64,000 nt of DNA, taken from Macrostomum lignano. Lineage: Eukaryota. Location of the stretch: the NCBI GenBank assembly GCA_002269645.1, contig NIVC01000859.1:62001-126000 (forward strand), read 5' to 3'. Below the pieces are notes generated by a model that saw nothing but the letters and a program-made list of their open reading frames with translations, was not told the origin of the DNA and ran no database searches. The translations under genes and the position numbers were made by a program. Below are positions 1,311 through 62,713 of the stretch, piece by piece (the stretch's first letter is position 1; the number at the start of each line of letters is the position of its first letter).

Positions 1311-1595
1311 TGTTAAATCGACTAACTCTTCGAAACCGAAAAATAACTAAGTAGGCAAAAATCGGATGCTTGTAGGCTTCAATACCTCTGCGTTCTCGCG
1401 CAGGCAAATAAAACAACCAAGTTAGCAAAAAAACACGCTGACCAAAAATCACGCCCTTTTTAATTATTATTTAACGTGGGGTGGGGTTAGCAAATCGAGG
1501 GGGGTTGGCTCATGTACATTAAATAAAGAGCAAATACATGTACAATTAAATAAGTAAAACCCCAAAAATATGACAAAAAATGAACCTCCAGAACA
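1311..1595 (-). repeat. Bel/Pao 3' LTR
   Basis: Matches 8003-8288 except for one small indel/substitution near caggcaaa(t/ac)aaaac. Confidence 0.97.
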
Positions 1596-1608
1596 TTCCC
1601 CCCTTCCT
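1596..1608 (-). promoter_or_regulatory. Polypurine tract of Bel/Pao element
   Basis: GGAAGGGGGGGAA on the minus strand, immediately before the 3' LTR. Confidence 0.9.
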
Positions 1609-2198
1609 GATTGGGGCCAATCAGCAAAAAAGCAGAAAAAAAATTGCCTCCTTGAAACTTACGTGCAATTAATTGAAACGGTTGCAAGCATAATTCGAAA
1701 AAACAGTAAACTCCTGTAAACAAAAAAATAAATCGCGCGAAATCAGAAATTAACATTAAGAACGCATGCAATGTGAAGTGTCAATTGGGATCAAAAGATA
1801 GTGTGCCAAATATAAACCTTTGCAATCGCTGGCCAACACAAAAAATCTCTGCTAAGAAACGAACACAAACGAACTCAAAGATGCTCAAACGATAATTAGT
1901 GAAATAACACGGGATGAAAAATGTCTTGAAAACTTAAATAATCCCTACTGTAAACATATGAAAAAATCAAAGCACAAAAACTGCCAAAAGAACTCGCATT
2001 CAAGCAATCAACAGGTCTTTTTACTCAGAATAAAAAAACACAAAATACGCAAAAATAAGCAACCCGTCACCACATCAGCTATTAGGTGCAAAAAACGCAA
2101 ATAATGACATGAAATTATAGATTATACTAACCATCATGAACTAGACGTAAAAAAAAACTACGTCTGAAAAGTCTTGTTTAGCAATAAGTCAACAGTCA

Positions 2199-3476
2199 CT
2201 ATTCACCTCGCTGCAGCACACACAACTTCGTCACGGGTCGCAGCACTGTTCCACCGCCAGTTCGCACCTTGGCCACGCGCACATGGCCGTCTCGTCCAGG
2301 AAATACCTCGAGAACTCGCCCGAGCGGCCAGTGTCCTCGAGGCGCATCCGCTCGTAGTGCCAAGACGATGTCGCCGACGGCGAGATCTGGCTGCTCCTTG
2401 ACCCGCTTGGATCTGGCGTTGAGTCTTGGCACCCACTCACGCAGCCATCGGTGCCAGAAGTGCCGCACCAACTCTTGGACACGTCGCCACCGCCGGCGCG
2501 GGTCGCGGCTGACCTCGGTCGAGACTTCCGTAGCAAAGTCACCACCCAGCTGTCCATGCAAGAAATGGTTTGGCGTCAACGGCGTGTCGTCCTTTGGGCT
2601 TGTGGTTTGGTATGTCAACGGCCTGGAATTGATGAGCGCTTCCGCACCTGTGAAGGCGGAATGCAGCTCTTCGTCGGTGATGTCAGCGTTGCTAAGGATG
2701 GCGCGCACAGCTCGCTTAGCGGCGCGAACCATAACTTTGTGGGCGCCGCCGAAATGGGGCGCCGACGGAGGCTGGAAGTGCCACTTGATGCCGCGCTCAG
2801 CTGCCGCTCTCTGGATTTTGTTCTGCTGCTCGTTTTCGAATTCTCGTAGTTCTCGCTCGCCTTTAACAAAATTGCCGCCGTTATCGGAGTAAACTTCGAG
2901 TGGCCGGCCTCTACGGTTGATCATGCGCGCGAAAGCATTCAGAAACGAGTCAGAATCCAAGCTGTACGCCATTTCCAGGTGCACAGCTCTCGTCTCCAAA
3001 CAGGTGAACAGGGCCAAATACCTCTTCGTTCGCCGTCTTCCGCGCCCTTGTACCGTTTCAAACGGACCACCGAAGTCGACTGCCACAAAGCTGAACGCTC
3101 GGAGCGAATTCTTCAGCCTGGCCTCTGGCAGCGGCGCCATCTGCTGCACCTCCGGTCCTGCTTTCTGCCTTCTGCATCGCGCGCACTCCTTCTCCCATTC
3201 TCGAATGGCTTCGCGCCCACCGATCACCCAAAACTTCGTCGACATCGCTGCCAGCGTCTGGTTTGTTCCGCCATGTCCTTGATCTTCGTGATAGTGCTTC
3301 ACCAACAACTTCGTGACCCAACTTCGCCTCGGCAGAATGACCGGATGCTTGGACTGATATGACAGATTCTGGTCGAACTTCAGTCTTCCGTCCACTCGCA
3401 GCAGTCCGTCTTCATCAAGAAATGGTTGGAGACAGCGAAGCTGACTGCTGGAGAAGACTGGCCTTCCCTTACGCAC
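2199..3476 (-). CDS. Bel/Pao integrase region (HHCC zinc finger, DDE core, C-terminal DUF5641-like); frameshifted from upstream pol
   Basis: HYHEDQGH...CARC; AVDFGGP, SDNGGNF, SRPLT, LTPNHFL, WPLGRVLEVFPGRDGHVR motifs typical of Bel/Pao. Confidence 0.93.
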   Translation of the reverse strand: MRKGRPVFSSSQLRCLQPFLDEDGLLRVDGRLKFDQNLSYQSKHPVILPRRSWVTKLLVKHYHEDQGHGGTNQTLAAMSTKFWVIGGREAIREWEKECARCRRQKAGPEVQQMAPLPEARLKNSLRAFSFVAVDFGGPFETVQGRGRRRTKRYLALFTCLETRAVHLEMAYSLDSDSFLNAFARMINRRGRPLEVYSDNGGNFVKGERELREFENEQQNKIQRAAAERGIKWHFQPPSAPHFGGAHKVMVRAAKRAVRAILSNADITDEELHSAFTGAEALINSRPLTYQTTSPKDDTPLTPNHFLHGQLGGDFATEVSTEVSRDPRRRWRRVQELVRHFWHRWLREWVPRLNARSKRVKEQPDLAVGDIVLALRADAPRGHWPLGRVLEVFPGRDGHVRVAKVRTGGGTVLRPVTKLCVLQRGE

Positions 3477-6400
3477 CTGCTGAACTTCTGCTTTGAAAGC
3501 TTCTTCTGAGCCACACGTAGGATTCGATCCTCAGTTTCTTGCAGCTCCTCGACCTCGAGATCACCAAGTCGCCTCTCATCTCGCGGAAGTCGGCAATTAC
3601 TGATGAAGCGCTGAACCCATGCTGTCACGCTACGCAGCCTGCGGTAGCTCGAAAATCGCTCTGGATTCAAACGCCAATCGTTGTCTGTGGTGTCGTTCGA
3701 CAACAGAGTTACGGCCGCCGATTTACTACTCTTGCTCGCCTCTCGCCGAACTTCTTGATCTCTGTCAACCGATGTCGGAACTAGCCTTGCCGGCCAGCCA
3801 TCCTCATCTAGCAGCAGAAACTCTGGTCCCGCGCTCCAGACCGCTGATTGGCAAAGGTCTTTGGCGCTACAGCCTCGCGATACGGCATCAGCGGGGTTCA
3901 GATCGGTCGGCACGTGACGCCACTGACAAGTCTTCACCGCCTCCTGAATGAACGCAACACGATTTGCTACGAACGGCTTGAAAATTCTACTGCGACCTCG
4001 AAGCCACCAGAGCACATTTGCACTGTCACTCCAGAACACCGACTCTCTCAGGTCTAAATCGAGCGCATCTGCCACCGTCTGGGCGAGTCGCACGCCAAGC
4101 ACCGCCGCCATGAGCTCGAGTCTGGGGATGCTGCATGCTGCCAATGGAGCTACACGTGCTTTTGCGGCTACAAGACGAACACAGATTTCGTCCAGGCTTG
4201 TGGCGCTCCTGAGATAGATTACCGCGCCGTAAGCCACCTGAGATGCATCCACAAAGACGTGTAGCACTGCCTTTTTGGTAGGATCAGGCCATAGACATCG
4301 TGGAATTTTCAGCATGCTCAACTCTTCAATCTCCGCTGCCCATTGCGTAGCCTTCGCGGCAACTTGCTGATCCAAGGGCTCATCCCAATCCGCTCCATTC
4401 TGCCAAATCTCTTGCAGAAGAATTCGCCCGCGAATTGTAAATGGACTCAGAAACCCGCATGGGTCGAACACCATCGCAACGCGCTTGAGCAGCTGTCGTT
4501 TCGACTCAACGGACACTTCCTTCGCACCTGCATTTCCCGTGATCGCGAGCATATCATCATTGGCTGTCCAAGTCACTCCCAACGCCTTCGACGTCGCCAT
4601 TTCTCCACGAAGCACGTGCTGCGCTTTCACCGCTCGATCCTCCGGAGCTACTGTCTCCAACACCTCAGACGCGTTCGACATCCATTTTCTCGCACACATG
4701 CCGGCTTTTTCCCACAGAGCTGTCAGTTCGCGGCGCAACTGGATAGCTTCATGGACGCTGTTCACTGAGTCCAAACTGTCGTCCATGTAGGTCGACTTCA
4801 GAATGGTTTCTGACGCTCTTGGAAAATGACTCCTAGCATGCTCCTGCGACACGAACTGAGCAAGAAACGGCGAACAATTAACTCCAAAAACGACACTCTG
4901 AAACTCGAATACCTCAGGTTTGCCCGTTTCGTTCCTGTCTCGCCACAAAAATCGAAAGTAGCGCCGATCTTCTGGCTTGAGGCGAATTCTGAGGTACATC
5001 TCTTCAATGTCGCAAACGATTGCCACTGGACCGCGACGGAATCGAAGGAGCACTTGAAATAGGTCGTTCTGAAGCTTCGGTCCTGGAAGGATGACGTCAT
5101 TGAGACTCACTCCTTGGCAGCGCGCGGAAGCGTCAAACACGATACGGACCTTGGTGGTGTCCTTGTCTTCTCTGATTACCGGCAAATGCGGCAGGTACCA
5201 TTCGGTGTTTTGAAGCTCACTGCTGTCTTCGACCTTCTTGAGATAACCTTTTTCCAACTGACCTTCCAACACCTCCTGATACGCTTTTGGCAATCCTTCA
5301 CTCCTCTGCAGTCGCTTCTCCGTGCTGATCAGTCTGCGTTCCGCAGCTTCACGATTGCTCGGCAGAGCACGATTTTGAGACTTCCATGGAATGGCTACCT
5401 GATATCTTCCTTCCACCATCGACATCGACGCCTTGACTACCGCCACAGCACGCTGCTCATCCGCAGTTAACGTCCCTCTTTCGCGGTTCAGCTCAGCTAC
5501 ATCAGGAACTTCCTCGATCGCCCACAACCTTCGAACCTGACTGTCGACCTGATCTTGACACTCGTGGCAGAGGAACGATTCCCCGCTCTTGCTGCTTCCC
5601 TCATTCGAACCTAACTGCCCGATGCAGGTCCATCCAATAGGAGTCAGTCGAGCTATTGGTTCCCCTGGCATTCCACAGACTTCTTTGCAAGCCAGATGCA
5701 TCTCGGCATTGTCGACACCGATAAGCATGTCAACCGTTTTCCGGCTTGATGTTGACTCAAACGGAATGCCTCTCAGATGCGCCCAGTGCTCCGCCAGTTG
5801 ACTCCAATCAACTGCCTTCATTCCGCCGGTTACTTTCTCCGCTGTGAAAGCAACAATTTTTGTCTCAAACGCTGCATCGACACTCCGGACTGTCACTTCT
5901 ACAGGCGCTGTTTCAAACGACTCGACTCCTCCGTTGAGCACCTTAACGTTTATGCGCTGAAGTTTACCTTCGAGTCCCAGCTCTGCTGCTACGTCCGCAT
6001 TGAGGTACGTGCGCGTACTCGCATCATCAAGCAACGCGTTGATCCGAACTTGGCGCTCACCAGCCACCAATATCACCGGCACCGTCCTCAACGCAGTTTC
6101 TTTTACGACTTCAGCCAGCATAGTGCGCTCCTTCTTCGTCGCCGCTGCTACGTCCTCCGTGGATTTTCGTGCCTCTCCTTCGCCGCTTCTCGTCGCTGCA
6201 GCTGCTGGTTTCGGCTCCCGCTTCTGGTGAAGCATTCGATGGTGTTTTCCCTGGCAACCATCTACGCCACAGGTTCTAGACCACCGACAAGCTAAACCAG
6301 AGTGATTGACGCCGAGACAATGAAAGCACAGCTTCTTCTCACGAGCAACGGCCCATCGCTTCACTACATCCATCTCCGCAAACTTCGGGCACTCCCAGGC

Positions 6401-7300
6401 GCCATGGCTTCCTTCACAGACACGGCAGTTTTTCTTGCGCTGCTCATCGGCTCTCGTTGACTCCGCGACAGCGCCAAAATGCGTTCGAGCTGTTTCCGTG
6501 CGCTGCATCCCGCTGAATTTCTTACTTTGCTCCATCTTCCCTGCTCCTGGCCCATTCTGTGCCGCAACTCCATGCACTGCCTCCATAGCAACCGTCTGAT
6601 ACTCAGCCTCCCGCAGCAGCCATTGATGAAGAGCGCTGAGCGTGTCATTTCTGCCATTCTCCCCGACCCATCGGTGGTATCGTGCCAGGGTGTCAGTCGG
6701 CAATTTCTTTTGCACGCGAAGATGAAGCAATCCATTGCTGTCTAGTTCAGCTTCACGACCCGCCTCCATCAGATTGATAACCGCTACATCCACCAGATCA
6801 GCCAGCTTCTTCAACTGAGGCGCGCTCTCCGTCACAATGGGCCGAAAACGGTCTAGATCCTCCAACACTAGCACCAGCCGGCGCCGCTCTCCTCCATATT
6901 CTCTCTCCAACCTATCCAGAGCCGCCTTGTACGCAAATTCAGAATGCCCTAGGTTGGCTATTAGCTTTAGCGCATCGCCCTGCAGACACTGCCTCAGTTG
7001 CAATAGCTTGTACACTCGAGAGGAGGGTGCAGCATCTACACACGCGTAAAAGGCCGCCTTCCACCCCTCGTATTGACGCTTATCACCTGAGAAACTGGGA
7101 ATCGCCACCCGCTGCAATTGCCGCCACATGTCCTGACTGACCTGCCTCTCCGCTTCTTCTCTCACCCTCTGTGTACACTCTTGCTGAACGATTGGCTCTC
7201 TAAGTTGCCACTGTACACTGGCTGACTGTGAGGTGGCTGGCCTGGGTGCAGGGTTTTGTTTTATCGATCGCTCGCCTGACCCCCTTCGTGGGCAGTCCAA
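3380..7300 (-). CDS. Bel/Pao Gag-Pol: DUF1759-like gag, CCHC knuckles, aspartic protease, reverse transcriptase, RNase H
   Basis: IPSFSGD; CRVCEGSHGAWEC and CFHCLGVNHSGLAC; ALLDDAS; WYLPHLPV, RIVFDAS, YMDD; HVFVDASQVAYGA, IPRLELMAA. Confidence 0.95.
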   Translation of the reverse strand: MDCPRRGSGERSIKQNPAPRPATSQSASVQWQLREPIVQQECTQRVREEAERQVSQDMWRQLQRVAIPSFSGDKRQYEGWKAAFYACVDAAPSSRVYKLLQLRQCLQGDALKLIANLGHSEFAYKAALDRLEREYGGERRRLVLVLEDLDRFRPIVTESAPQLKKLADLVDVAVINLMEAGREAELDSNGLLHLRVQKKLPTDTLARYHRWVGENGRNDTLSALHQWLLREAEYQTVAMEAVHGVAAQNGPGAGKMEQSKKFSGMQRTETARTHFGAVAESTRADEQRKKNCRVCEGSHGAWECPKFAEMDVVKRWAVAREKKLCFHCLGVNHSGLACRWSRTCGVDGCQGKHHRMLHQKREPKPAAAATRSGEGEARKSTEDVAAATKKERTMLAEVVKETALRTVPVILVAGERQVRINALLDDASTRTYLNADVAAELGLEGKLQRINVKVLNGGVESFETAPVEVTVRSVDAAFETKIVAFTAEKVTGGMKAVDWSQLAEHWAHLRGIPFESTSSRKTVDMLIGVDNAEMHLACKEVCGMPGEPIARLTPIGWTCIGQLGSNEGSSKSGESFLCHECQDQVDSQVRRLWAIEEVPDVAELNRERGTLTADEQRAVAVVKASMSMVEGRYQVAIPWKSQNRALPSNREAAERRLISTEKRLQRSEGLPKAYQEVLEGQLEKGYLKKVEDSSELQNTEWYLPHLPVIREDKDTTKVRIVFDASARCQGVSLNDVILPGPKLQNDLFQVLLRFRRGPVAIVCDIEEMYLRIRLKPEDRRYFRFLWRDRNETGKPEVFEFQSVVFGVNCSPFLAQFVSQEHARSHFPRASETILKSTYMDDSLDSVNSVHEAIQLRRELTALWEKAGMCARKWMSNASEVLETVAPEDRAVKAQHVLRGEMATSKALGVTWTANDDMLAITGNAGAKEVSVESKRQLLKRVAMVFDPCGFLSPFTIRGRILLQEIWQNGADWDEPLDQQVAAKATQWAAEIEELSMLKIPRCLWPDPTKKAVLHVFVDASQVAYGAVIYLRSATSLDEICVRLVAAKARVAPLAACSIPRLELMAAVLGVRLAQTVADALDLDLRESVFWSDSANVLWWLRGRSRIFKPFVANRVAFIQEAVKTCQWRHVPTDLNPADAVSRGCSAKDLCQSAVWSAGPEFLLLDEDGWPARLVPTSVDRDQEVRREASKSSKSAAVTLLSNDTTDNDWRLNPERFSSYRRLRSVTAWVQRFISNCRLPRDERRLGDLEVEELQETEDRILRVAQKKLSKQKFSRCVREGQSSPAVSFAVSNHFLMKTDCCEWTED

Positions 7301-7977
7301 TCAGCTTTTTCACTCCTGTCTGGCGCAGCGCTTACACCCACCTCAGCCCCAATCGACTGTTCAGCCAAACCTGAACCTGGGCTAGCCCTTTCACACGGGC
7401 TCTCTGCCTTAGTGCTGCCAGTAACAATTTTCAATCGCCTCAGCTCCTCTGCCAACTGCTCATGCCGTTGTTGATAGTCTTTCTCTAGCTCTCTCTGCAC
7501 CTCTTCCAACTCCAGCGCTCTGTGCTCTGCGGCTTGCACTTTTCGCTGCTCTTCCTCACGCCTCTGCTGTTCTTCAGACTCCGCCAAGCGATCCTGTTCC
7601 TCCCTCTCAGCTGCTTCACTTCTGCTACGATCTTTCCAGAACTCGGTCATCAGACCCACAGTCTCACCGTAGTCCTTTTCAGCATTCTCTAGCTCCTTGA
7701 TCGTTTGGCGACGCAGTGGCAGGTCGTTTCCGGCGAGCTCCAGCAGCTTCTCCAGCTCTGTTGTCACAGCCTCGAACAGCTTCTCCATGAGAGTCGCTTG
7801 CTGTTGTACTTCGGCGCCGTCTTGACCACCAGCAGCGAGTTGTTGCACCAGCCGGTTTCTTCCTTTGGTGAATGCGGCCTTGGCCCTCGTCTTGGCGGCC
7901 TTCGCGTCCATCAGCTTGCGTTCTTCCTCGTCAGCCGGCGGGTAGTTCGACTCGAATTCTTCTCCGTCCTTTTGCAT
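7261..7977 (-). CDS. Bel/Pao Gag N-terminal coiled-coil segment (frameshifted from rest of gag-pol)
   Basis: ATG lies just after the PBS. The ORF is E/Q/K-rich and helical and overlaps the next ORF, which suggests a single indel. Confidence 0.8.
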   Translation of the reverse strand: MQKDGEEFESNYPPADEEERKLMDAKAAKTRAKAAFTKGRNRLVQQLAAGGQDGAEVQQQATLMEKLFEAVTTELEKLLELAGNDLPLRRQTIKELENAEKDYGETVGLMTEFWKDRSRSEAAEREEQDRLAESEEQQRREEEQRKVQAAEHRALELEEVQRELEKDYQQRHEQLAEELRRLKIVTGSTKAESPCERASPGSGLAEQSIGAEVGVSAAPDRSEKADWTAHEGGQASDR

Positions 7978-7982
7978 TTTTG

Positions 7983-8000
7983 AACCACGCTCTGCTACCA
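7983..8000 (-). promoter_or_regulatory. Primer binding site, initiator tRNA-Met type
   Basis: TGGTAGCAGAGCGTGGTT, 2 nt after the 5' LTR. It resembles the complement of the animal tRNAiMet 3' end (AACCATCCTCTGCTACCA). Confidence 0.85.
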
Positions 8001-8002
8001 GT

Positions 8003-8288
8003 TGTTAAATCGACTAACTCTTCGAAACCGAAAAATAACTAAGTAGGCAAAAATCGGATGCTTGTAGGCTTCAATACCTCTGCGTTCTCGCGCAGGCAAA
8101 ACAAAACAACCAAGTTAGCAAAAAAACACGCTGACCAAAAATCACGCCCTTTTTAATTATTATTTAACGTGGGGTGGGGTTAGCAAATCGAGGGGGGTTG
8201 GCTCATGTACATTAAATAAAGAGCAAATACATGTACAATTAAATAAGTAAAACCCCAAAAATATGACAAAAAATGAACCTCCAGAACA
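8003..8288 (-). repeat. Bel/Pao 5' LTR
   Basis: Direct repeat of 1311-1595. Confidence 0.97.
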
Positions 8289-8479
8289 ACCCCCAAGACC
8301 CAGACACACACAAAAATTCGATGCGATCGCTTTTTACTCCTGTTATCTTTTAATTACTTATTACTTTTTACTTTTATTGTTTTGCCTTCCAACTCACACT
8401 ATCTTACAATCCTACCCACTCCGCCCTGTGCGCCCCCTCCCATCTCCATACTGCTTACTTTCTAGCCAAACCCCAACCC

Positions 8480-8945: not shown

Positions 8946-9323
8946 CTCGAATAACACTAACGAAGATCAGCTTTCTCAGCCAAAAGTCAAGTTTGCAAAA
9001 CTGGTCACAGACCAAGAGCAGAAACGTTAACAAAGTTTTAGCAAAAACCAAGTTGTATATTTTTCTGTTAAATTCAGGCCCTTTATAAAGCAAAAAGGAG
9101 GGGGTAATTGTTACGTTTAAACAAATTATTTGTAAAATATTTACAAAGCTAATTTAAATAAAAATTCTGCGCATTGAAACAAGAAATTCTGTGATTGGTA
9201 GAGAATTATTTCGCCAATCATATTACAAGAAGTAGTATAGTATGCCCCTATTACATAATATAAGATATTGTGTACTTCTAGTGCTTCTAGTGTAACTTTT
9301 GGCAATTGAATTCTTTCAAACTG

Positions 9324-9516
9324 TATTGGGTGCGGCCATAGACGACTAAGTCGCACACACACCCAGCCATGAGCTAAAGAAACGATGCTTCAAGCTTGGA
9401 AATAAAAAAATAGAAGTTACGATACATGAAATAAGGCGCTCTGTTCAGGGTGCAAACATTTCGGTGACCTTGTTGATCTTGACTCACTGTCTTCCGCTAG
9501 AGAAGAAGTCATAACA
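9324..9516 (+). repeat. Gypsy 5' LTR (terminal TG mutated to TA)
   Basis: About 12 differences from the 3' LTR by manual alignment. Confidence 0.93.
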
Positions 9517-9517
9517 G

Positions 9518-9535
9518 TGGCGTCGCAAGCAGGAT
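9518..9535 (+). promoter_or_regulatory. Primer binding site (TGGCGTCGCAAGCAGGAT, tRNA-Ser-like)
   Basis: Starts with TGG 1 nt after the LTR and overlaps a probable former gag ATG at 9534. The tRNA identity is from memory. Confidence 0.75.
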
Positions 9536-9537
9536 GG

Positions 9538-10630
9538 CTAGATGGGCCACTGGGTCGGCCCCGCCCGCTTGTCCCTGGCCGGCGAGGCGCCCCCGCCAGC
9601 GCCCAGCCGCTGCACTGCGTCTATTTGCTGACTTTAGGCGGCTTGGTCTATGGGCCTGGCACCGGCCGCGCGGCAGAATTCGGCATACACCTCATAGGAG
9701 ACAGCCTGAACGCTCGCTGAATTGTCGAGCCACTGTTGGAGCGCCGCGCTGGTCCGGGCCATGCTAGTTTTGAAGCTTACTAGCAGGTGCCTCCAGTCGT
9801 AGCTATAATCGGCAAAGCTGTTGCACAGCCACGTGGCGCCATTGCGCACGATCGTAGAGACACCAAAGCTGTGCAACGGGGCGCAGCACCTCGAAGAAGG
9901 TCGAGAGGTGGCCCATGCTGTTGTTGGTGCACTCGAGGTCTAGCACCAACTGGGCTTCGCCGGTCAGGTAGTAGCTGCCCACGTGGTAGCGGGCCCGAGA
10001 CTTATTAGCGTGCTGGATGCCGTTGATCGGGCCAGGCAAGCCCGCAGCGTCGTCGCGCTGGCCCAGCGCACTCTCATCTAGGATTGCTCGCTCTAGATCC
10101 AGGACCTGCATGCAGGCGGCGAGCACATCGGTGGGGATCGCAAAAGCTAGTTTGTGCTTTTGCACAGCACGGGCCATACCGGCCGCTAGGACCAGGCGAT
10201 GGGTGCCAGATGGGCAGTCGGTCATTCTCAGGACTACGTCCTGCGCCAGGTTCGTCTGGGGCAAGGCAGGGCTGTACTCCGCGGGCTCTAGTATGCCTTG
10301 GAGGCCCATAGCGCGGAGCAGCCGCTTGGTGCTGGCCCAATGACCGATCGTATGCACCACCTTGGTATAGGTCTCAAGGCAGGCCTCATCAAAGCCGGGC
10401 CACGTCTAGAGCACCTTGAGGACGTAGCCCTGGAGGGTCCTGCCGCCGGTGTGGTGATTGGTCGCCCACCGCATCACTTTGCTAGCAAGCACAAGGTTTG
10501 CGGCAATGCGCAGCCGGCCCTGGTCCTCATCAATGAGGTGCCTGGTCTCGGCTACATGGGCCGGCTCGAGCTGGGTTGGGGCAGCCTCCACCAGAACGTC
10601 TCCATCTTCCAGTCTTACCCACCCGAGGGC
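9538..10630 (-). pseudogene. Endogenous viral element: Jingchuvirales/chuvirus-like nucleoprotein, 5'-truncated, with premature stops (10406-10408, 9634-9636) and one frameshift (~9880)
   Basis: Stitched translation has KVMRWATNHHTGGRTLQGYVLKV, HTIGHWASTKRLL, DVVLRMTDCPSGTHRL, RYHVGSYYLTG, GHLSTFF, STI..SFADYSYDW. This is the ordered motif series I recall for chuvirus N (KxNWWxxNHHTG, HxxGHWAST, PxGTHR, YHxGAxYLTG, GRLGTF). Confidence 0.82.
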
Positions 10631-10899
10631 AACGCCCGAAGAATCTTTCCGAGTTAGAATCCTTCCTTGGACTTGTGATGCACTTTTATATACTTTATTT
10701 AACTAGTTGGCGACCAGCCCCCCACTCTCCTACCCTCGCACATGACTCAGCGTACATAGCCTGATCGCAACTCTAGCTCATATTTAATGTACATTGCTCA
10801 ATGCTCAATATCGGCAACAGTCAAATATTCTAAATAAATATAATCGCATCGACCGTCTAGGGGCTCTAAGCTTTTTCTCTTCGGCCAGTTCTGCCAAAG

Positions 10900-12319
10900 C
10901 ATACTTGAACTCTTACAGGACTGATTACGTTCTTCTCGCGATTCATTCCAAACCTTTCTGGAATATCGGCTCCGTTGGTACACCTGAAGCGCAAAGTTGT
11001 GGAGTTTCGTTGGGGCGCAAAAGAACAAAATGCGTTCAGAAATCTTCAGAAATCACTTTCAGAAGACGCTGCTTTGCATGCGTACGACCCAAAGCTACCG
11101 GTTGAGCTCGAAGTAGACGCTTCGCAAATTGCCCTTGGTGGTGTCCCGAGTCAACAAGGACGCCCTGTCTTGTACATCAGCAAACTTTTGTCATCATCGG
11201 AGCGAAATTATTCACAAATAAAGCGAGAAGCGCTTGCGATAATTTGGGGTGTTAGAAGATGTCATCGTTTTCTCTGTGGCAGAAAATTTAAGCTAATAAC
11301 CGACCATCGCCCTCTCGTGTACATCTTAGCTTGTGACATAGAGCTACCATCGAGAGTGTCCGCAAGGCTGCAGTGATGGGCGATATTTCTCACGGCGTAC
11401 GATTACGAGATCGAGCATCGTAAATCTAAAGCTATGGCATCTGACGCGCTCTCAAGATTGGTTCCGCAAGGAAGAAGCGGTGAAACACTCGAGATTGGTA
11501 ACATTCACACCGTTTCAACTTCACTGTCTCTGGAAGATAGAGGCTGTGAGTCCTTGGGATAGAGTCCATATCGAATTTGCAGGACCGGTCGACAACCGTT
11601 ACATGCTCGTTCTGGTAGTGGTAGATTCTTACAGCGGATATCCTGAAGTCCATGTTACTAAAGATATGACTTTTCGAACTGTCATTCAGTGTCTCAGGAG
11701 GACATTTTCTCAGCTTGGAATTCCAAGGACACTTGTGTCAGATAACGGACCATGCTTTATCAGCAAGGACTTTACGGAGTGGTTGGCAGGAATTGACTGT
11801 GAGCACCTAACTATCGCAGCTTATCAGCCACAAAGTAATGGGGTTGCAGAGCATTTCGTACGCACGCTAAAAAAAAGCATCAAGGCAAATGGCTTCAGTC
11901 AAGAGTCTGTTGACCGCTTCTTTCTGTTTTATCGGACATCAGACAATAAATCGGGATCTTCACCAGCGGAGCAGCTACTGGGGCACAAGCTCAGGGTTCC
12001 GTTTACTAAGAGGCCAGTCGGACTAGAGGATCCAGTTATCTACAAAAACGAGAGAGACAGGCCCATCACTGCAAAACTGCTCTTGCCTATCGGAAGGAGC
12101 ATGGCCATGATCAAGACAGATGAACCGAACTCGAATTATCGGAAAGTTCACCTGGATCAGCTACATCCGTACAGTCCAACCGGCGAGGAGCCCGCAGAAA
12201 CCGACAGAATGCCACCCGGAGCTGGCGAACACGTGGAAGGGAGAAAAAGAGGAGCCTCCACAACAAGAGGGGCTGCGTACATCTCCAATCCCTGCGGTTC
12301 CCGAGGATACTATGATTAA
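10900..12319 (+). pseudogene. Gypsy pol remnant: RT thumb, RNase H and integrase core; HHCC region deleted
   Basis: GLITFFSRFIPNL, VDASQIALGGV, SERNYSQIKREALAI, TDHRPL, DALSRL, PWDRVHIEFAGP, VSDNGP, PQSNGVAE. Stop at ~11374 plus frameshifts. Confidence 0.92.
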
Positions 12320-12432
12320 ACTCAGGAGAAGCATCCGACTTTCGGAGAAACCCAAAGTTAACTATAAGTGCTAAAATTTGTTTCTCCCGCATTAACTTAA
12401 AAAATTGTTCTTTGCCATTGTAAGGGGGGAGA

Positions 12433-12625
12433 TGTTGGGTGCGGCCATAAACGACTCAGTCGCACACACACCCAGCCATGAGCTAAATAAGCGATGCTTT
12501 AAGCTTGGAAATAAAAAAATAAAAGTTCGATAACATGAAATAAGAAGCTCTGTTCAGAGTGCAAACATTTCGGTGACCTTGTTGATCTTGACTCACTGTC
12601 TTCCGCTAGAGAAGAAGTCATAACA
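12433..12625 (+). repeat. Gypsy 3' LTR
   Basis: TG...CA termini, preceded by PPT AAGGGGGGAGA. Confidence 0.93.
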
Positions 12626-12849: not shown

Positions 12850-15800
12850 AGTCTTAATTTATTTGCACCACGGTGCAGATAAATGCCGCTACCTCCTCGT
12901 GGTCAGAGTGGAGAGCCGCGCTTAACTGCTGCGGCGGCCAAATGCGGCAGGACTAAGCGAGGGCAGCGGAGCGCCCGTCGGCGTGTTGAGCGTCGGCGTG
13001 AGCGGAACCGACGAGGCCGGCTGCGTGGCGCCGCCCGTCGAACTGCCGCGCGGGTCCACTCGGATCCTCCGGGTGGCGCCGGGGACCGTGAGGCTCAACT
13101 GCATTAAGCCCCAGCCGTACCACAGGGCATGCTTCGGGTCGGGACGCTGAACTGCCGCACTCTCAAGGCTACTTGGCGTAGAGGTGTGCTGGCGAAGCTA
13201 GCGTACGACCTGAGCTGCGACGTCATTTCGCTACAGGAGGTGTCTATCAAGGCCGACCCGGGACTTCATTGTGAGGACTTGGGCGCCGGGTGGACCCTCT
13301 TCTATACTTCTGCGGACCAGCGAGGTCGTGGAGGAGTTGGAGCGCTGATCGGGCCGAGGCTGCAGCAGAGCTGTCGCTGCATCTCCCCCCCCCCGGTTGC
13401 TTCGGATCGACGTCCGGCTTCGCGGTCAGAATGCTCGCCTGTTCTGCGCGTACGCGCCCCCTGCCACACGCCCTGACGAGGCTCAAGAGTTTTTTGAGCA
13501 GCTCTCAGCGCAGGTAGAGGCGACGGCGCAGCGTGACACAGCGGTCGTCCTCGGAGACCTGAACGCAGACCTGCGTAGGTCCGAGAGGTCGCTGTTCGTG
13601 ACGTGGCGGGAACAACAACACCGAGGCATTGGAGGACTTCCTGGAGAGGCAGGACATGGTGTCGGCCAACACCCGCTTCCGCAAGCCACTGAGTGGTCTC
13701 GCAACCTTCGTGGGCTGCAAGCGGAGGCGACGGAACGCGCGTGGCAGGAACGCAACCCGGAGACAAGCACAGCTCGACCACGTGCTCGTGCGTTTCCGTG
13801 AGCGTCGTCGCGCCGTCAACTGCCGTACCATCACGCCGCTGGCTCTGCGGTCCGATCACCGGCTCCTCATCTGCAACCTCAACCTTCGCGATCCGCTCTA
13901 CCGTCCGCCGAAGCGGCCACCGCAGCGCTACTACCGCGCGCTCAGAACCACCGATACGCAGCGTCGCTTTGCTAGCGCCTTTAACACCGCGCTGGGCGAC
14001 AAGCGTGGAAGTGCCGAGTATGCGGAAGTTTGCGCTGCAGTCAGAACCGCCGCGGAGCAAGCAGTCCCGATGATGCAACCGGCTCAACGTGGGAAGCCGG
14101 TCTGGCAGGACGACCCCGCGATTCAGGCAGCGAGGGAAGATCTGGAGAGGCTCCGCTTGAGCAGGCGACCAACCCGCGAGGCAGAGGTAGCTCTGGCAGT
14201 TGTCTACCTGCAGCGCCAACAAGCGGATGTCGATGACGCCATTCAGGCTGTCTCTGCCGCTGGGCCCGATGCCAGAGGGCGCGTGGCCTGGTCCACCATC
14301 AACGCTCTGACGGGGCGAAAGCGGCGCAATCCACTGAACTGGCTGGTGACACTCCGGACGAGCGCAGGAACGAGCTGCGCGAGTTCTTCGCCGCCATCGT
14401 TAACGCGCCGCCACCCCCGCTGCCAGACAATCTGACACTGCCGCCGGAGACGCCGTTGCCGGCAGAGGAGAGTTTCAGCGTAGCCCCAGTCAACGCAGCC
14501 GACGTTGTCAAGCTCGCCCAGCAGTCCCCGGGCGGGTCCGGACGAGGTGCCTATCGAGGCGTTGCGCATCCCCTGTGTTGCCGCTGAGGTCGCCAGAGTG
14601 ATGAACCGCGTGCTCTTCGGTGAGGCGGCGCCCAACGAATGGACCACGGCGCACATCGTCGCTGTTCCAAAGAAGCCGGGCATCACTAGGCTTGAAGACC
14701 ATCGAGGCATCTGCCTTCAGTCCTGTGCAGCGAAGCTGTTCAACCGGATGCTGCTTTCGCGGTTGCAGCCCGTGCTGGATCCGTACCTGCGCCCAGAGCA
14801 GAACGGGCTCCGGCCCTATCGCGGCACAGTGGCGCAGATCCTGGCTCTTCGCGGAGTCATCGAGGAGGCGTGGATTCGCCAGTCGATCCTGATTCTAATC
14901 TTTATTGATTTCAAGAAGGCATTCGACTCGGTTGTCAGAGCCGTGCTTCCAATGGTTCTCCGCGCGTACAACGTGCCTGGGCAGCTGATCTCCGCCATCA
15001 TGGCGATGTATCGTGATACGACAGCTGCTGCGACAACACCGGACGGCCTATCGGACTCCTTTAAGACATTCTCCGGAGTGCTTCAGGGAGATACGCTGGC
15101 GCCGTTCCTGTTCGTCCTGGTGCTTGACTGGGTGCTGCGGACTGCTCTTCCTACCGACGACGACGGCTTTCTGCTGCAGCGACGCGTGGGTCGACGTCAA
15201 CTGGAGAAGCGGCTCATCGTGCTTGGCTACGCCGACGACCTCGCCCTGCTATCCTCGACCGTCGAGGGCGCCCAACGGCAGCTGGACAGGCTAGTTGCCG
15301 TTGCGGCGAGCGTCGGCCTGGTGGTCAACACGCAGAAGACCGTTGTGCTCTGCGTGCCGGACGACATCGAGGCTGCAATATTCTGCCGAGGCGCTGACGG
15401 GCAGGCGACCGAGCTCCCGCGATGTCAGCAGTTCTTCTACCTCGGCGGTCTGGTTCCAGACGCTCGCGAGGACCTGCGACGCCGCCGCGGACTTGCCTGG
15501 GCTGACTTTCGTTCTGTGAGGGCAGTCCTGCAGTCCGAGGCCCTACCGGACCGCCAGAGGGCGGCGCTGTTCCAGGCGGTAATCGAGACCGTCCTGCTCT
15601 ACAACGCCGAGACCGTCCTGCTCTACAACGCCGAGAACTAGACGCTGACGGACTCGCTCAAACAGCAAGTCGATGCGGCGCACGCTGGCCTGCTGCGCGC
15701 CTCCTTCAACATCGGCGTCGAGCGAGTCAACAACGCGGCACTCTATCGCCGCGCTGGCCTGCCACGTCCAAGCGATCTACTGCGCCGTCGGCGACTCCAG

Positions 15801-19302: not shown

Positions 19303-20907
19303 TCAGTCAGAGTGTACTTGACGCTCCGGATCCAGCTGCCAAGTAATGAAAAGGACGCCTCTGCCTTTGATCTGCACCAACTTGAACTCTGTCTCACCAT
19401 CAGCGGTCAAAGTGTATCGGGGTTTCTTAGACAATGGTAATCTTACCAAAAACGATATGCTACGGAACAGATTGAAGTCAGCCGAGGTTGGCTGGCTTCC
19501 CGTAATCGTGAAAACCCTGTCAATATTGTCTTCAATCTTAAAGAAACTTATCCATATGTCATCTTTCAAAGACCTGCAGCAAACAAGCTTTTCTGTGATA
19601 GTACAGATGGTGAACACATCGCAGCGGTCAGACAATATTAACATTCGATCTCGAACTGCCATGCGAGTGTCTTTCTTAATAAGCTCGCAATCATGAGGCA
19701 CTGGAAAAGTCATTTGAATCTGATTAGAATCTTTGTTGAGCCCCAAAATTGTTAGATCATCACTATGCTCTTTAATCAGGGTGAACAACTTGTCACAGTT
19801 TCCAGCGATGCAGTACAGCTTCTTAGTACTTTCGTGCAACTCGGTGATGCAGATTCTTGACTTGTGAGCTCCGCTGAGGTCGGTCACTGTCACCGCTTGC
19901 TCCTGAGCGATGAACAGCAGCTGTCGCTCATTGTCGCAGTGGAGATCTCGGATTGGCTGATCGGCCTCCCAGCTGCAGGCCAGGCGACCCACAATATCTG
20001 CATCAGGAGACAGGAGCAGAATTTTGGATTCAGGAAAGTTTTTGACGCCTCTAGTATCGGCTTCGCTATCCGAGCTCTCCGAGGCAACCTGAACCTCAAC
20101 AGCTACAAAAATGCTTGGCTGAGGCAGTCGGCTGGGATCTGTAGAATGCTCGGCAGACTTCTTAACGATATCCGAGTCATGTATGACGAACCCAGAGGTG
20201 TTGTTGCACACGGTAAGACACGTGGCTATCTCGTTTTCTTGAAGCTTTGCTTCTTTTCTGCTTTCATTTGCTTTCAGCTGAATTTTATCGCATCGGACAG
20301 AGTCAGAAACATCGATCAGTTCAACATACTTTTTTAACATTGTCAGCTCGGATTTTACGGCATTTTGCAGCTCCCTTACTGACGAGTTCAAATCTGGATA
20401 AGCGACAAGCTCGACTTTCCCTTCATCCTCATCCATTTTCACCAGCTTCGAGTCCAACTGAAGCGTTCTTAGCGATGCCTCCAAGCTCCTGTTGACGAGG
20501 AAGACCTGCCTCATATTGTTGTTATTCTTTGCTTGCTTTAACTCTCTCTCAGAGTCTTCCAGCTCCGAGACACTTGATAGAGAGACCATTAGCTCGTCAT
20601 GCTGTTTAGTAACAACAGCACAGAGCTCACTTTGGCACTGGTCCAATGTCTCTCTGAGTTCGGCGAATGAGTCATCAAGAAGCTGCAGGTCAGACGCGAG
20701 TCTCTGCTGCATCAGTCTCATTGGCGCTCGATATGCCTTGAAGTGATGTATCCTCTCAGCGACTGAGGCTTCCAACGCGTCTAATTCAGCAAAGTCGTTT
20801 TGCAGGTGCGAGACGCAGAGAGGCTGGCAGGTGATTGGAGAATCGCTTGTAGCAGCACTGCGGCAGAGTCGCACGGAACAGCGACAAGGTGACTCCATAG
20901 CTTGCAA
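19303..20907 (-). CDS. Intronless 534-aa protein: CX4CX15CX2H putative Zn motif, long coiled coil, putative beta-propeller-like C-terminus
   Basis: Long open ORF. It shares blocks with 22688-24337 (VRLCR..A...SPI..QPLC..HLQ.D, RLMQQRLASD, DQPIRDLHCD...LLFIAQ). Confidence 0.8.
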   Translation of the reverse strand: MQAMESPCRCSVRLCRSAATSDSPITCQPLCVSHLQNDFAELDALEASVAERIHHFKAYRAPMRLMQQRLASDLQLLDDSFAELRETLDQCQSELCAVVTKQHDELMVSLSSVSELEDSERELKQAKNNNNMRQVFLVNRSLEASLRTLQLDSKLVKMDEDEGKVELVAYPDLNSSVRELQNAVKSELTMLKKYVELIDVSDSVRCDKIQLKANESRKEAKLQENEIATCLTVCNNTSGFVIHDSDIVKKSAEHSTDPSRLPQPSIFVAVEVQVASESSDSEADTRGVKNFPESKILLLSPDADIVGRLACSWEADQPIRDLHCDNERQLLFIAQEQAVTVTDLSGAHKSRICITELHESTKKLYCIAGNCDKLFTLIKEHSDDLTILGLNKDSNQIQMTFPVPHDCELIKKDTRMAVRDRMLILSDRCDVFTICTITEKLVCCRSLKDDIWISFFKIEDNIDRVFTITGSQPTSADFNLFRSISFLVRLPLSKKPRYTLTADGETEFKLVQIKGRGVLFITWQLDPERQVHSD

Positions 20908-26795: not shown

Positions 26796-26868
26796 CTGCA
26801 GTGCGGCGGGTTATCAGTGCTTGCATAATGCGGAGAGACAGACAAACAGAGAGGACAGTCAGACCCAC

Positions 26869-26919
<51 letters not shown>

Positions 26920-26926
26920 GCCAGAC

Positions 26927-26978
<52 letters not shown>

Positions 26979-27019
26979 GGACGGACAGACAGACAGACAG
27001 AGAGGACAGTCAGACCCAC

Positions 27020-27058
<39 letters not shown>

Positions 27059-27094
27059 GCCAGACAGACAGACAGAGAGGACAGTCAGACCCAC

Positions 27095-27191
<97 letters not shown>

Positions 27192-27219
27192 GAGGACAGT
27201 CAGACCCACACAGACAGAC

Positions 27220-27258
<39 letters not shown>

Positions 27259-27277
27259 GCCAGACAGATAGACAGTC

Positions 27278-27330
<53 letters not shown>

Positions 27331-27331
27331 T

Positions 27332-27368
<37 letters not shown>

Positions 27369-27382
27369 GAGGACAGTCAGAC

Positions 27383-27415
<33 letters not shown>

Positions 27416-27440
27416 CACAAAGACAGACAGACAGACCCAC

Positions 27441-27473
<33 letters not shown>

Positions 27474-27547
27474 GAGGACGAGAGGACAGTCAGACAGATG
27501 ACAGACAGACAGAGAGGACAGTCAGACAGACAGACAGACAAACAGGC

Positions 27548-27590
<43 letters not shown>

Positions 27591-27706
27591 TACAGACAGA
27601 CAGATACATAGACAGACAGACAGACAGATAAACAGACAGACAGACAGACCCACACAGACAGACAGACAGACAGACAGACACTAAAAAAGACAGGTAGGCA
27701 TGCATG

Positions 27707-27745
<39 letters not shown>

Positions 27746-46459: not shown

Positions 46460-47356
46460 GCTTTCGCTGCTGCTGCATGAATGCGTCAGAAATTCATGCT
46501 TTTTTAGGTCAAGGTTTGTTTAGATAGGCATTATAGAGCCGTGGGTTTTGGTCAAACTTCGGGAAATCACGGATGTCACATTCTGCTGAACCCTGAATTA
46601 CATAAGCACAGAACAGGCACACAATAGCATATACTATTGTCATAGTTAAGCAGTGGATATCCTGTGTTGTTTGTTGTTTTTCGAGTTGGCTTAAAAGTCT
46701 GCGTGGAAGTCAATGTCAATCAAAGCAAGGCATTCAGAAAAAAACAAGAAAAAAATGAGGCAAGTTACAGAGGATAAAATCAACTAGAAATAGTTTTGCA
46801 ATTCATGTATTACATTATGAACTAATTTCCTAACTATACAATATTAAAACACGGCTTTCAAAGTCAATAACTCAGAAGTCAAATCAAGAAGACATTGTAA
46901 ATAAAACACTATTTTAATAACAACGAAAACAGAGTGAAAGACGAGCCTAAAAAACGGCAGTTCCAAATATCCGAATGTCCTTGAAACATAATCAAAGTCC
47001 TTGTGAATAATATTAGTTTCATTTCTTGCAACGTCAGAAAAAATTATAAAATACAAAGTGTACACAAAAATAAAGCTTGTTTCAATTTGGCAAAATGTTA
47101 CACTTGATTCCTTTTTATAATCGTACAATAGTCAGGGTACACTGGACACGAAATCTTAATGATGAAGTTAATTCCCTACAAGAATTTGCCCGTTTCTGCA
47201 TTTTTGCCGTGGGACTGTTCCCTAACCTGCTCTGGATATCTTGCAAAAGACTAAAGAGCTGATAGCAACAAAGGCACAAGCTACAGACGTAGCTGTGAAT
47301 GCTGCTGAAAGCTGGCTTTAACGAACTGCTTGTCAGCTTGTCTCGAGCTCCCAGCA

Positions 47357-62027: not shown

Positions 62028-62089
62028 CTAAGGCATGAGTTATCAGGTGCGATCGTTTGCTTAAAATGGGATTTGCTGATTTTAATGGG

Positions 62090-62700: not shown

Positions 62701-62713
62701 AACAGCAAAATAC

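What the first reader, a model, noticed from the sequence alone, without database searches (positions are those of the whole stretch)
9538..10630. Chuvirus-like (Jingchuvirales) nucleoprotein gene fossilised in an animal genome
Seen: three minus-strand ORFs (10406-10591, 9803-10360, 9634-9876) join into one reading. There is one in-frame TAG (KVL*TWPGF), one frameshift near 9880, and a probable premature TAA at 9634 that extends to TAG at 9538. Established, from my recollection of chuvirus N proteins: conserved blocks KxNWWxxNHHTG.G...GY..KV, HxxGHWAST, LR...PxGTHR, YHxGAxYLTG, GRLGTF and STL. Here they appear in the same order and similar spacing as KVMRWATNHHTGGRTLQGYVLKV, HTIGHWAST, LRMTDCPSGTHR, YHVGSYYLTG, GHLSTF and STI. 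Inference: this is a non-retroviral endogenous viral element from a negative-strand RNA virus of the host lineage. If the host is a free-living flatworm, it records an otherwise unsampled virus.
Basis: partly seen in the sequence, partly recalled or inferred. Interest (0 to 1): 0.93.

Follow-up and report, generated by a model that had tools for sequence, protein, structure and literature searches.

The report
Qinvirus-like nucleoprotein fossil inside a retrotransposon
A broken copy of the nucleocapsid gene of a qinvirus-like negative-strand RNA virus, not a chuvirus, sits backwards inside a decayed LTR retrotransposon in an unidentified animal genome, so it is a real but ordinary kind of viral fossil from a poorly known virus family.

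Summary
The three minus-strand ORFs and the quoted motifs are there. Each ORF alone matches one protein family (115.6, 47.3 and 12.4 bits; shuffles at most 3.4).

The family is not Jingchuvirales. The named relatives are segment-2 nucleocapsid proteins of Qinviridae (order Muvirales), such as Wuhan insect virus 15 and Shahe qinvirus-like virus 1. An exhaustive search gave 272 hits, the best at E 9e-24. Foldseek of a model of the window fragment returned only Qinviridae N proteins as significant matches. With a full-length qinvirus N model, a chuvirus-related N ranked 30th at E 0.88.

The gene is a pseudogene. It has no start, about 70 N-terminal profile positions are missing, and it carries one internal stop and one frameshift.

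The roughly 1.1 kb, 63% GC insert lies antisense inside a degenerate LTR retrotransposon (9322-12625). That element has 95% identical TGT..ACA LTRs, a primer-binding site, a polypurine tract, and RNase H and integrase remnants. The insert occupies the place of gag, protease and RT.

The likeliest origin is template switching onto viral RNA during reverse transcription. This mechanism is inferred, not shown.

The host is a divergent metazoan of unknown species. The finding is a new member of a known kind and of moderate interest.

The parts
9322..9516 (+). 5' LTR of a degenerate LTR retrotransposon (195 nt, begins TGT and ends ACA)
   Evidence: It forms a direct-repeat pair with 12433-12625. 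Identity is 95.3% over non-gap columns and the K2P distance is 0.049. The termini were read.
9518..9535 (+). Primer-binding-site-like 18-mer (TGGCGTCGCAAGCAGGAT), one base after the 5' LTR
   Evidence: Read directly. Its complement ends in CCA, as a tRNA 3' end does. No tRNA gene in the window could confirm the match.
9619..10684 (-). Qinvirus-like nucleocapsid (segment-2) pseudogene. It is 5'-truncated, with one internal stop and one frameshift. The virus-derived GC-rich block as a whole spans about 9536-10640.
   Evidence: Profile envelope, 187 bits, i-E 3e-57. Per-ORF scores with shuffle controls. Exhaustive phmmer best E 9e-24 with 272 hits. Named relatives are Yingvirus N proteins. Foldseek top hits are all Qinviridae N. 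GC is 62.7% against 36-47% around it.
10609..10689 (+). Short plus-strand stretch (PVLPTRGQRPKNLSELESFLGLVMHFY) that looks to me like a retroelement Pol RT-RNase H connection motif. Its status is unverified.
   Evidence: Read. There was no PDB match and no similarity to the neighbouring BEL/Pao Pol. There was no DNA similarity to the second such motif near 10890-10990.
10890..12319 (+). Pol remnant of the LTR element, running from the end of RT through RNase H to the integrase core. gag, protease and most of RT are absent. The RNase H and integrase parts lie in different frames, so there is at least one frame change.
   Evidence: Pfam RT_RNaseH_2 E 4.5e-28, RT_RNaseH E 6e-25 and rve E 2.7e-15. 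The plus-strand translation was read.
12422..12432 (+). Polypurine tract (AAGGGGGGAGA) abutting the 3' LTR
   Evidence: Read directly.
12433..12625 (+). 3' LTR (193 nt, TGT...ACA)

Best explanation
A fragment of about 1.1 kb from the nucleocapsid (segment-2) gene of a qinvirus-like negative-strand RNA virus (Qinviridae/Muvirales-like) is fixed in an animal genome as a pseudogene. It lies in antisense orientation inside a degenerate Ty3/gypsy-type LTR retrotransposon (9322-12625). It fills the space between the primer-binding site and the end of RT, where gag, protease and RT should be.

The most likely origin has three steps:
1. In a germline cell that carried both the virus and the active retrotransposon, the element's reverse transcriptase switched template from retrotransposon RNA to viral RNA and back (copy-choice).
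2. The element's own integrase inserted the chimeric cDNA.
3. The locus has decayed since then. It lacks a start and the N-terminus, and it has one stop and one frameshift.

Shown here: homology to the qinvirus N family, the pseudogene state and the LTR/PBS/PPT/pol architecture around it. Inferred: copy-choice capture, germline origin, and moderate age (about 5% LTR divergence). Because the viral insert is antisense to the element, the captured template would have been genome-sense RNA.

I put the identity of the insert at about 0.95 and the capture route at about 0.6.
For: Identity:
- Exhaustive phmmer gave 272 hits at E <= 1e-3 and 92 at E <= 1e-10, best 9e-24. All listed hits are proteins of roughly 100-700 aa, most 350-500. 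Those looked up lie on 1.4-2.2 kb contigs.
- Two hits are Wuhan insect virus 15 (YP_009342457) and Shahe qinvirus-like virus 1 'nucleocapsid protein' (YP_009337853), both genus Yingvirus, family Qinviridae.
- BLASTP of window pieces against the former gave 2e-13 and 2e-9.
- The family consensus carries the same motifs.
- An AF2 model of the longest uninterrupted window piece (pLDDT 77) hits only Qinviridae N significantly, at E 1e-5 to 6e-4.

N function of the family:
- The full-length model has pLDDT 93.5.
- Beyond Qinviridae and a yue-like virus, its remote hits are dominated by rhabdovirus, paramyxovirus, pneumovirus and filovirus nucleoproteins in BFVD and PDB. These are weak, with TM 0.3-0.42.

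Context:
- An LTR pair with TGT..ACA ends, a PBS, a PPT, and RNase H plus integrase on the plus strand.
- The GC-rich insert starts right after the PBS.
- There is no poly(A) at the mRNA-sense 3' end.

Precedents:
- eBxnv-1 lies inside a gag-less LTR element with PBS and PPT (PMC5177903).
Against: - The N sense is opposite to the retrotransposon sense. In Aedes most EVE-LTR pairs share polarity (10.1101/127498), and encapsidated genome-sense RNA should be a poor template.
- The target-site duplication is ambiguous: AAAC on the left against AACT on the right, or AAAC if the boundary is shifted by one base.
- About 250 nt between the insert and the clear pol remnant are unexplained. They include a second RT-connection-like motif with no DNA similarity to the first.
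- Qinvirus segment termini, as seen in L002, are not recognisable next to the PBS.
- No second copy of the chimera and no intact relative of the LTR element was available to define the breakpoints.
- The host genome was not identified, so integration rests on this one assembled window.
Confidence: 0.7

Rival explanations
1. The qinvirus-like N fragment entered an already integrated LTR retrotransposon by another route. Candidates are a cDNA made by a LINE-type reverse transcriptase or end-joining at a break. The insertion would have come with a deletion of gag-protease-RT, or that deletion would have followed it.
For: - The orientation is antisense to the element, which random end-joining explains without special pleading.
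- A LINE-type RT ORF lies nearby at 14505-15641 (RVT_1, E 1.6e-27).
- There is unexplained filler with a second RT-like motif between the insert and pol.
Against: - There is no poly(A) and no target-site duplication around the insert.
- The insert begins directly after the PBS and replaces the retroelement's 5' internal region cleanly, which would need a coincident deletion of several kb.
- There are published precedents for in-element capture (PMC5177903; 10.1101/127498).
Confidence: 0.2
2. One reading: the element derives from a chuvirus-like (Jingchuvirales) nucleoprotein gene.
For: - RdRp-based work places Chuviridae as a tentative link between Monjiviricetes and the Qinviridae and Yueviridae classes (PMC10101049), so the two groups are neighbours.
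- One chu-related N appears among the remote structural hits (rank 30).
Against: - The named sequence relatives are all Qinviridae.
- No chuvirus N appears among the hits to the window-fragment model.
- The chu-related N scores E 0.88 and TM 0.31, no better than the rhabdovirus and paramyxovirus N proteins in the same list. Qinviridae N proteins score E 1e-21 to 8e-14 with TM 0.67-0.82.
Confidence: 0.03
3. An assembly artefact or contamination: a viral cDNA or RNA-derived read set wrongly joined to host sequence.
For: The composition (63% GC) differs sharply from the immediate flanks. No reads were available to check.
Against: - The gene is truncated and broken, unlike exogenous relatives, which have open frames on 1.4-2.2 kb contigs.
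- It is bracketed on both sides by matching parts of one LTR element within a continuous 64-kb window.
- Host coding regions in the window are similarly GC-rich.
Confidence: 0.03
4. A co-opted host gene: the N-like sequence still encodes a working protein.
For: Many family-conserved residues are retained. An uninterrupted 446-aa qin-like N ORF exists in another public assembly (L021), so open copies do occur elsewhere.
Against: In the window there is no start codon, the N-terminal part is missing, and there is one internal stop and one frameshift. The sequence lies antisense inside a decayed transposon.
Confidence: 0.02

Closest known systems
Segment-2 nucleocapsid proteins of Qinviridae (genus Yingvirus), e.g. 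Wuhan insect virus 15 YP_009342457 and Shahe qinvirus-like virus 1 YP_009337853
   Same: The window pieces share the protein family, the motif order (NHHTG..GY..KV, H..GHW.ST, LR...P.GTH, YH.G..YLTG, G.L.TF, ST.) and the predicted fold. They are 20-37% identical to family members, comparable to the 21-39% among classified and unclassified members.
   Different: The window copy is DNA in an animal genome. It is truncated at the N-terminus, broken by one stop and one frameshift, and has no accompanying L segment. Its nearest relatives are unnamed metatranscriptome sequences at 37% identity or less.
eBxnv-1, a nodavirus-like EVE inside a degenerate BEL/Pao LTR retrotransposon of Bursaphelenchus xylophilus (PMC5177903)
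   Same: An RNA-virus gene lies between two LTRs of an element that keeps its PBS, PPT and pol remnants but has no gag. It is interpreted as capture by the retroelement.
   Different: That donor is a positive-strand virus, the captured gene is RdRp and the element is BEL/Pao with identical LTRs. Here the donor is a negative-strand qin-like virus, the gene is N, the insert is antisense, the pol is Ty3/gypsy-type (RT_RNaseH_2) and the LTRs are 95% identical.
Qinvirus-derived EVEs in arthropods: Camponotus floridanus EVE7 (PMC6540820), Machilis (PMC6955108), and Shi et al. 2016 as cited there
   Same: They are genome-integrated fragments of qinvirus-clade viruses.
   Different: The ant qinvirus EVEs (PMC6540820) are listed as RdRp (L) fragments. 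PMC6955108 records qinvirus EVEs in Machilis and, citing Shi et al. 2016, in arthropods, without naming the gene in the passages I read. In the papers I could search I found no N-derived (segment-2) qinvirus EVE. The host here is a metazoan of unresolved lineage.
EVE-LTR retrotransposon association in Aedes (10.1101/127498; PMC6797480) and Chuviridae EVEs linked to BEL/Pao elements (PMC7642597)
   Same: Non-retroviral RNA virus fragments are embedded in or next to Ty3/gypsy and BEL/Pao elements, and copy-choice recombination is proposed as the cause.
   Different: In Aedes most EVE-LTR pairs share polarity. Here the N sense opposes the element. Neither piRNA-cluster membership nor small-RNA production can be assessed from sequence alone.
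Endogenous bornavirus-like N elements (EBLN) of vertebrates (PMC4982594)
   Same: They are N-gene-derived EVEs of a Haploviricotina virus.
   Different: From my own knowledge, EBLNs are processed-mRNA retrocopies made by LINE-1, with poly(A) tails and target-site duplications, and some are co-opted. This locus has no poly(A) tail, lies within an LTR element and is a pseudogene.

Membership tests
Qinviridae-like (Muvirales) segment-2 nucleocapsid protein family | Significant sequence similarity to segment-2 proteins of ICTV-classified Yingvirus species | tested here: met
   Wuhan insect virus 15 protein (P0024) scored E 1e-16 and Shahe qinvirus-like virus 1 protein (P0037) scored E 9e-15 in the whole-library search. 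Pairwise BLASTP gave 2e-13 and 2e-9.
Qinviridae-like (Muvirales) segment-2 nucleocapsid protein family | Family-conserved motifs present in the same order | tested here: met
   The consensus of 40 and of 100 aligned members shows the same blocks in the same order as the window. The profile match is colinear over positions 70-391.
Qinviridae-like (Muvirales) segment-2 nucleocapsid protein family | Same predicted fold as qinvirus N proteins | tested here: met
   Foldseek against BFVD with the window-fragment model gave five Qinviridae N proteins at E 1e-5 to 6e-4 with TMq 0.58-0.66. Nothing else fell below E 0.2.
Qinviridae (the virus family as such) | Bisegmented genome with an L protein of the qinvirus RdRp lineage (IDD in motif C, PMC10101049) | not testable with these tools
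   No L-derived sequence is linked to the locus, and only the N-derived fragment is present. The donor can therefore be called qinvirus-like, not a member of Qinviridae.
Jingchuvirales (Chuviridae) nucleoprotein | Sequence or structural similarity to chuvirus N closer than to the N proteins of other Haploviricotina | tested here: not met
   No chuvirus N appeared among the hits to the window model. With the full-length qinvirus N model, a chu-related N ranked 30th at E 0.88 and TM 0.31, no better than the rhabdovirus and paramyxovirus N proteins in the list. No direct profile comparison was made because the tools held no chuvirus N sequence.
Non-retroviral endogenous viral element (EVE) | Virus-derived sequence physically continuous with host or transposon DNA | tested here: met
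   The locus lies inside one 64-kb window between the LTR/PBS and pol/PPT/LTR of a retrotransposon. Metazoan genes and a BEL/Pao element lie around it.
Non-retroviral endogenous viral element (EVE) | Germline integration with vertical inheritance (present at the same site in other individuals or related species) | not testable with these tools
   The host genome was not identified. Six exact-protein look-ups and an exact LTR DNA scan found nothing.
LTR retrotransposon (Ty3/gypsy-type) | Paired LTRs with TG..CA termini | tested here: met
   The pair is 195 and 193 nt long, 95.3% identical, with TGT...ACA ends.
LTR retrotransposon (Ty3/gypsy-type) | PBS after the 5' LTR and a polypurine tract before the 3' LTR | tested here: met
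   TGGCGTCGCAAGCAGGAT lies at 9518-9535 and AAGGGGGGAGA at 12422-12432. The cognate tRNA was not identified.
LTR retrotransposon (Ty3/gypsy-type) | Target-site duplication | tested here: inconclusive
   The flanks read CAAAC and AACTG. A 4-nt AAAC duplication appears only if the right boundary is shifted by one base.
LTR retrotransposon (Ty3/gypsy-type) | Complete gag-pol | tested here: not met
   Only RT_RNaseH_2/RT_RNaseH and rve were found. The gag, protease and RT core are replaced by the viral insert, so this is a degenerate, non-autonomous chimera.

The most novel reading that the evidence does not exclude
This would be the first recorded nucleocapsid-derived fossil of a qinvirus-like (Chunqiuviricetes) virus, and it would lie in a non-arthropod animal. 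It would then be direct genomic proof that such viruses replicated in the germline cells of that animal lineage. One paper states that so far only trypanosomatids have been confirmed as hosts of this family (PMC11108086). Because the insert lies antisense behind an LTR promoter, the chimera might also yield antisense N transcripts that feed small-RNA defence.
Probability: 0.2. Interest if true: 0.6.

Novelty: new member of a known kind. Interest (0 to 1): 0.45.

Why it matters
Qinviridae is known almost only from metatranscriptomes, and one paper states that only trypanosomatids are confirmed hosts (PMC11108086). A qin-like N gene embedded in a metazoan-type retrotransposon, next to metazoan genes, is physical evidence that such a virus once replicated inside cells of an animal lineage.

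It also adds an N-derived example to qinvirus fossils that, where the papers I read name the gene, are RdRp-derived.

The locus is an unusually legible example of an RNA-virus fragment sitting exactly between the PBS and the pol remnant of an LTR element. That supports the copy-choice model of EVE formation. The reversed polarity is a detail worth explaining.

The finding does not reveal a new kind of system.

Tried and rejected
- **Pfam:** no family for the three ORFs or for ten homologues.
- **Word-indexed protein search:** nothing with the longest uninterrupted piece. With a 40-sequence alignment it returned only one protein.
- **PDB sequence search:** nothing.
- **The search for related loci with the broad alignment:** failed for lack of a conserved stretch. 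A narrower alignment worked.
- **Cluster look-up of ten top hits:** no informative names.
- **Rfam and tRNA scans of the window:** empty.
- **Host identification:**
  - Six exact-protein look-ups found nothing on record.
  - An exact 41-nt LTR scan of metagenome contigs found nothing.
  - TBCK-like ORF homologues reach only 38% identity or less over the full length, all from animals. I therefore rejected naming a host phylum.
- **Capture of the viral segment terminus:** I looked next to the PBS for the terminal panhandle motif seen in L002 and did not find it.
- **Plus-strand RT-like motif at 10609-10689:** I tested whether it duplicates the later one. There was no DNA similarity and no protein support, so I left it as an unverified resemblance.
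- **Second N-like copy in the window:** none found.
- **WGS prefixes JAAUXU and JAAUXT:** no paper holds them.
- **Foldseek against PDB:** no significant hit. The nucleoprotein fold assignment of the family rests on weak but consistent matches.

Full report
**1. Observation**

The quoted peptide blocks are in the translations as they stand. Pfam gave nothing for them, as did a word-indexed search and a PDB sequence search.

An exhaustive phmmer search was decisive. The query was a single-frame reading with an X marking the in-frame stop. The library was 1.84 billion representative proteins. The search returned 272 proteins at E <= 1e-3 and 92 at E <= 1e-10, with a best E of 9e-24 at 37% identity.

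A profile of 112 full-length hits matched one place only in the six-frame translation of the whole window:
- It lies on the minus strand, with envelope 9619-10684.
- It covers profile positions 70-391 of 432 and scores 187 bits.

Each of the three ORFs matches the profile alone, at 115.6, 47.3 and 12.4 bits. The best of 200 shuffles of each scored at most 3.4 bits.

Break count:
- One internal stop.
- One frame change.
- Loss of the start codon and of about 70 N-terminal profile positions.

Whether the final stop is premature cannot be said, because the C-terminal tails of the family vary in length.

**2. What the gene is**

The hits carry no Pfam domain, and those looked up lie on contigs of 1.4-2.2 kb with a single ORF.

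Exact look-up of two IMG/VR loci named them:
- Wuhan insect virus 15 (YP_009342457).
- Shahe qinvirus-like virus 1 (YP_009337853), which UniRef calls 'Nucleocapsid protein'.

Both belong to genus Yingvirus, family Qinviridae, order Muvirales, class Chunqiuviricetes. They are hits P0024 (E 1e-16) and P0037 (E 9e-15). BLASTP of two window pieces against P0024 gave 2e-13 and 2e-9.

The family consensus reads NHHTG..GY..KV, H..GHWAST, LR..S.PAGT, YH.GA.YLTG, LGRLG.F and STLA.SPH.

Structural evidence agrees:
- An AlphaFold2 model of the longest uninterrupted window piece (199 residues, pLDDT 77) matched five Qinviridae N proteins in BFVD at E 1e-5 to 6e-4. A sixth Qinviridae fragment came next, and nothing else was significant.
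- A full-length model of the Wuhan insect virus 15 protein (pLDDT 93.5, pTM 0.90) matched Qinviridae N at E 1e-21 to 8e-14 with TM 0.67-0.82.
- It then matched a yue-like virus protein at E 3e-4, and rhabdovirus and paramyxovirus N proteins at E 0.02-1.
- A chu-related N ranked only 30th, at E 0.88.
- In the PDB nothing was significant. The weak top matches were mostly rabies, HMPV, Nipah and Ebola nucleoproteins, with TM 0.32-0.42.

The family therefore most likely has the two-lobed nucleoprotein fold of Haploviricotina. The window gene belongs to the qinvirus branch, not to Jingchuvirales.

**3. Context**

Direct repeats lie at 9322-9516 and 12433-12625. They are 95.3% identical (K2P 0.049), begin TGT and end ACA.

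- One base after the left repeat comes TGGCGTCGCAAGCAGGAT. This is a primer-binding-site-like 18-mer whose complement ends in CCA.
- Just before the right repeat comes AAGGGGGGAGA, a polypurine tract.
- Between the repeats, on the plus strand, are RT_RNaseH_2 (E 4.5e-28) and an integrase core (E 2.7e-15).

This is an LTR retrotransposon on the plus strand. It lacks gag, protease and most of RT. In their place, starting right after the PBS, lies the N-like sequence on the minus strand. That sequence is a block of 62.7% GC between LTRs of 42-44% and flanks of 36%.

There is no poly(A) tail at the mRNA-sense 3' end. The target-site duplication is ambiguous.

About 250 nt between the insert and the clear pol remnant are unexplained. 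They hold a short plus-strand motif that I take, from recollection only, for an RT-RNase H connection motif. No tool supported that reading.

**4. Host**

- The neighbouring element at 1311-8294 is a BEL/Pao retrotransposon (Peptidase_A17, DUF1759, DUF5641, with 99% identical LTRs). From established knowledge, BEL/Pao elements are confined to Metazoa.
- A TBC-kinase-like gene at 61-64 kb has only animal homologues. Identity is 38% or less over its full length.
- Other host genes include an ABC-2 transporter exon and a tandem array of short-chain dehydrogenases.
- The species could not be found. The flatworm idea remains untested.

**5. Mechanism**

The best-supported account is copy-choice recombination during reverse transcription of the LTR element, followed by integration with the element's own integrase.

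This has been proposed for eBxnv-1, which has the same gag-less LTR/PBS/PPT architecture (PMC5177903), and for Aedes EVEs (10.1101/127498).

Two templates copied in one pass keep the same polarity. The antisense orientation therefore implies that genome-sense viral RNA was copied. This is the less expected template and the main point against the account. Insertion into a pre-existing element by another route is the main rival.

The LTR divergence of about 5%, together with only one stop and one frameshift in roughly 1 kb, points to a moderately young insertion. The date cannot be calibrated without the host.

**6. Comparison and novelty**

Qinvirus-clade EVEs are known in arthropods. The ant ones are listed as RdRp fragments (PMC6540820). 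PMC6955108 records them in Machilis and, citing Shi et al. 2016, in arthropods, without naming the gene in the passages I read. I found no N-derived example in the searchable literature.

One paper states that only trypanosomatids are confirmed qinvirus hosts (PMC11108086).

The finding is a new member of a known kind: a non-retroviral EVE captured in an LTR element.

**7. In passing**

A scan of metagenome contigs with the family alignment found 15 short virus-like contigs and two WGS-style contigs:
- JAAUXU010013756.1 is 64.5 kb long and holds an uninterrupted 446-aa qin-like N ORF. That ORF is 35% identical to the Shahe virus N (E 4e-63) and lies about 6 kb from a glycosyltransferase ORF.
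- JAAUXT010005484.1 holds a truncated N-like ORF.

Neither contig resembles the window at the DNA level.

**8. Verdict**

Interest is 0.45.

Noticed in passing
L021 (JAAUXU010013756.1) 9851-11191; L022 (JAAUXT010005484.1) 613-1134: Two public WGS-style contigs carry qin-like N sequences. One is 64.5 kb long, with an uninterrupted 446-aa ORF that is 35% identical to Shahe qinvirus-like virus 1 N and lies about 6 kb from a Glycos_transf_1 ORF. The other has a truncated 173-aa ORF. The organisms are unknown. Neither contig has DNA similarity to the window.
   Followed up: partly
window 1311-8294 (minus strand): A near-intact BEL/Pao LTR retrotransposon with 99% identical LTRs (1311-1601 and 8003-8294). 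Its ORFs carry DUF1759, RVT_1, Peptidase_A17, Integrase_H2C2, rve and DUF5641.
   Followed up: partly
window 10609-10689 and 10890-10990 (plus strand): Two plus-strand peptide stretches look like the same Pol RT-RNase H connection motif but share no DNA similarity. They are separated by about 200 nt of AT-rich sequence. The first abuts the viral insert. It may be a scrap of a second retroelement or a chance resemblance.
   Followed up: partly
window 19303-20907 and 22688-24337 (minus strand): Two paralogous long ORFs of 534 and 549 aa have no Pfam match. They share a Cys/His-rich N-terminus followed by coiled-coil-like sequence. A 131-nt stretch is 70% identical between them.
   Followed up: no
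window 45671-55340 (minus strand): A tandem array of five 262-aa intronless short-chain dehydrogenase ORFs (adh_short, E 1.7e-45 for the first). An RNase H ORF lies between copies at 49310-49882.
   Followed up: no
window 14505-15641 (plus strand): A reverse transcriptase ORF (RVT_1, E 1.6e-27) without LTR-type domains lies in a 64% GC region. It is probably a non-LTR retrotransposon.
   Followed up: no
window 26796-27500 and 28626-29525: Long tandem arrays with periods of 8 nt and 25 nt lie beside an ABC-2 transporter exon (27490-28593, minus strand). The local AT and GC skew is strong.
   Followed up: no
window 61071-63988 (minus strand): A TBC-domain kinase-like gene (RabGAP-TBC plus Rhodanese) lies in large GC-rich ORFs. 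Its best homologues are animal proteins at only 36-38% identity, which marks the host as a divergent metazoan.
   Followed up: partly
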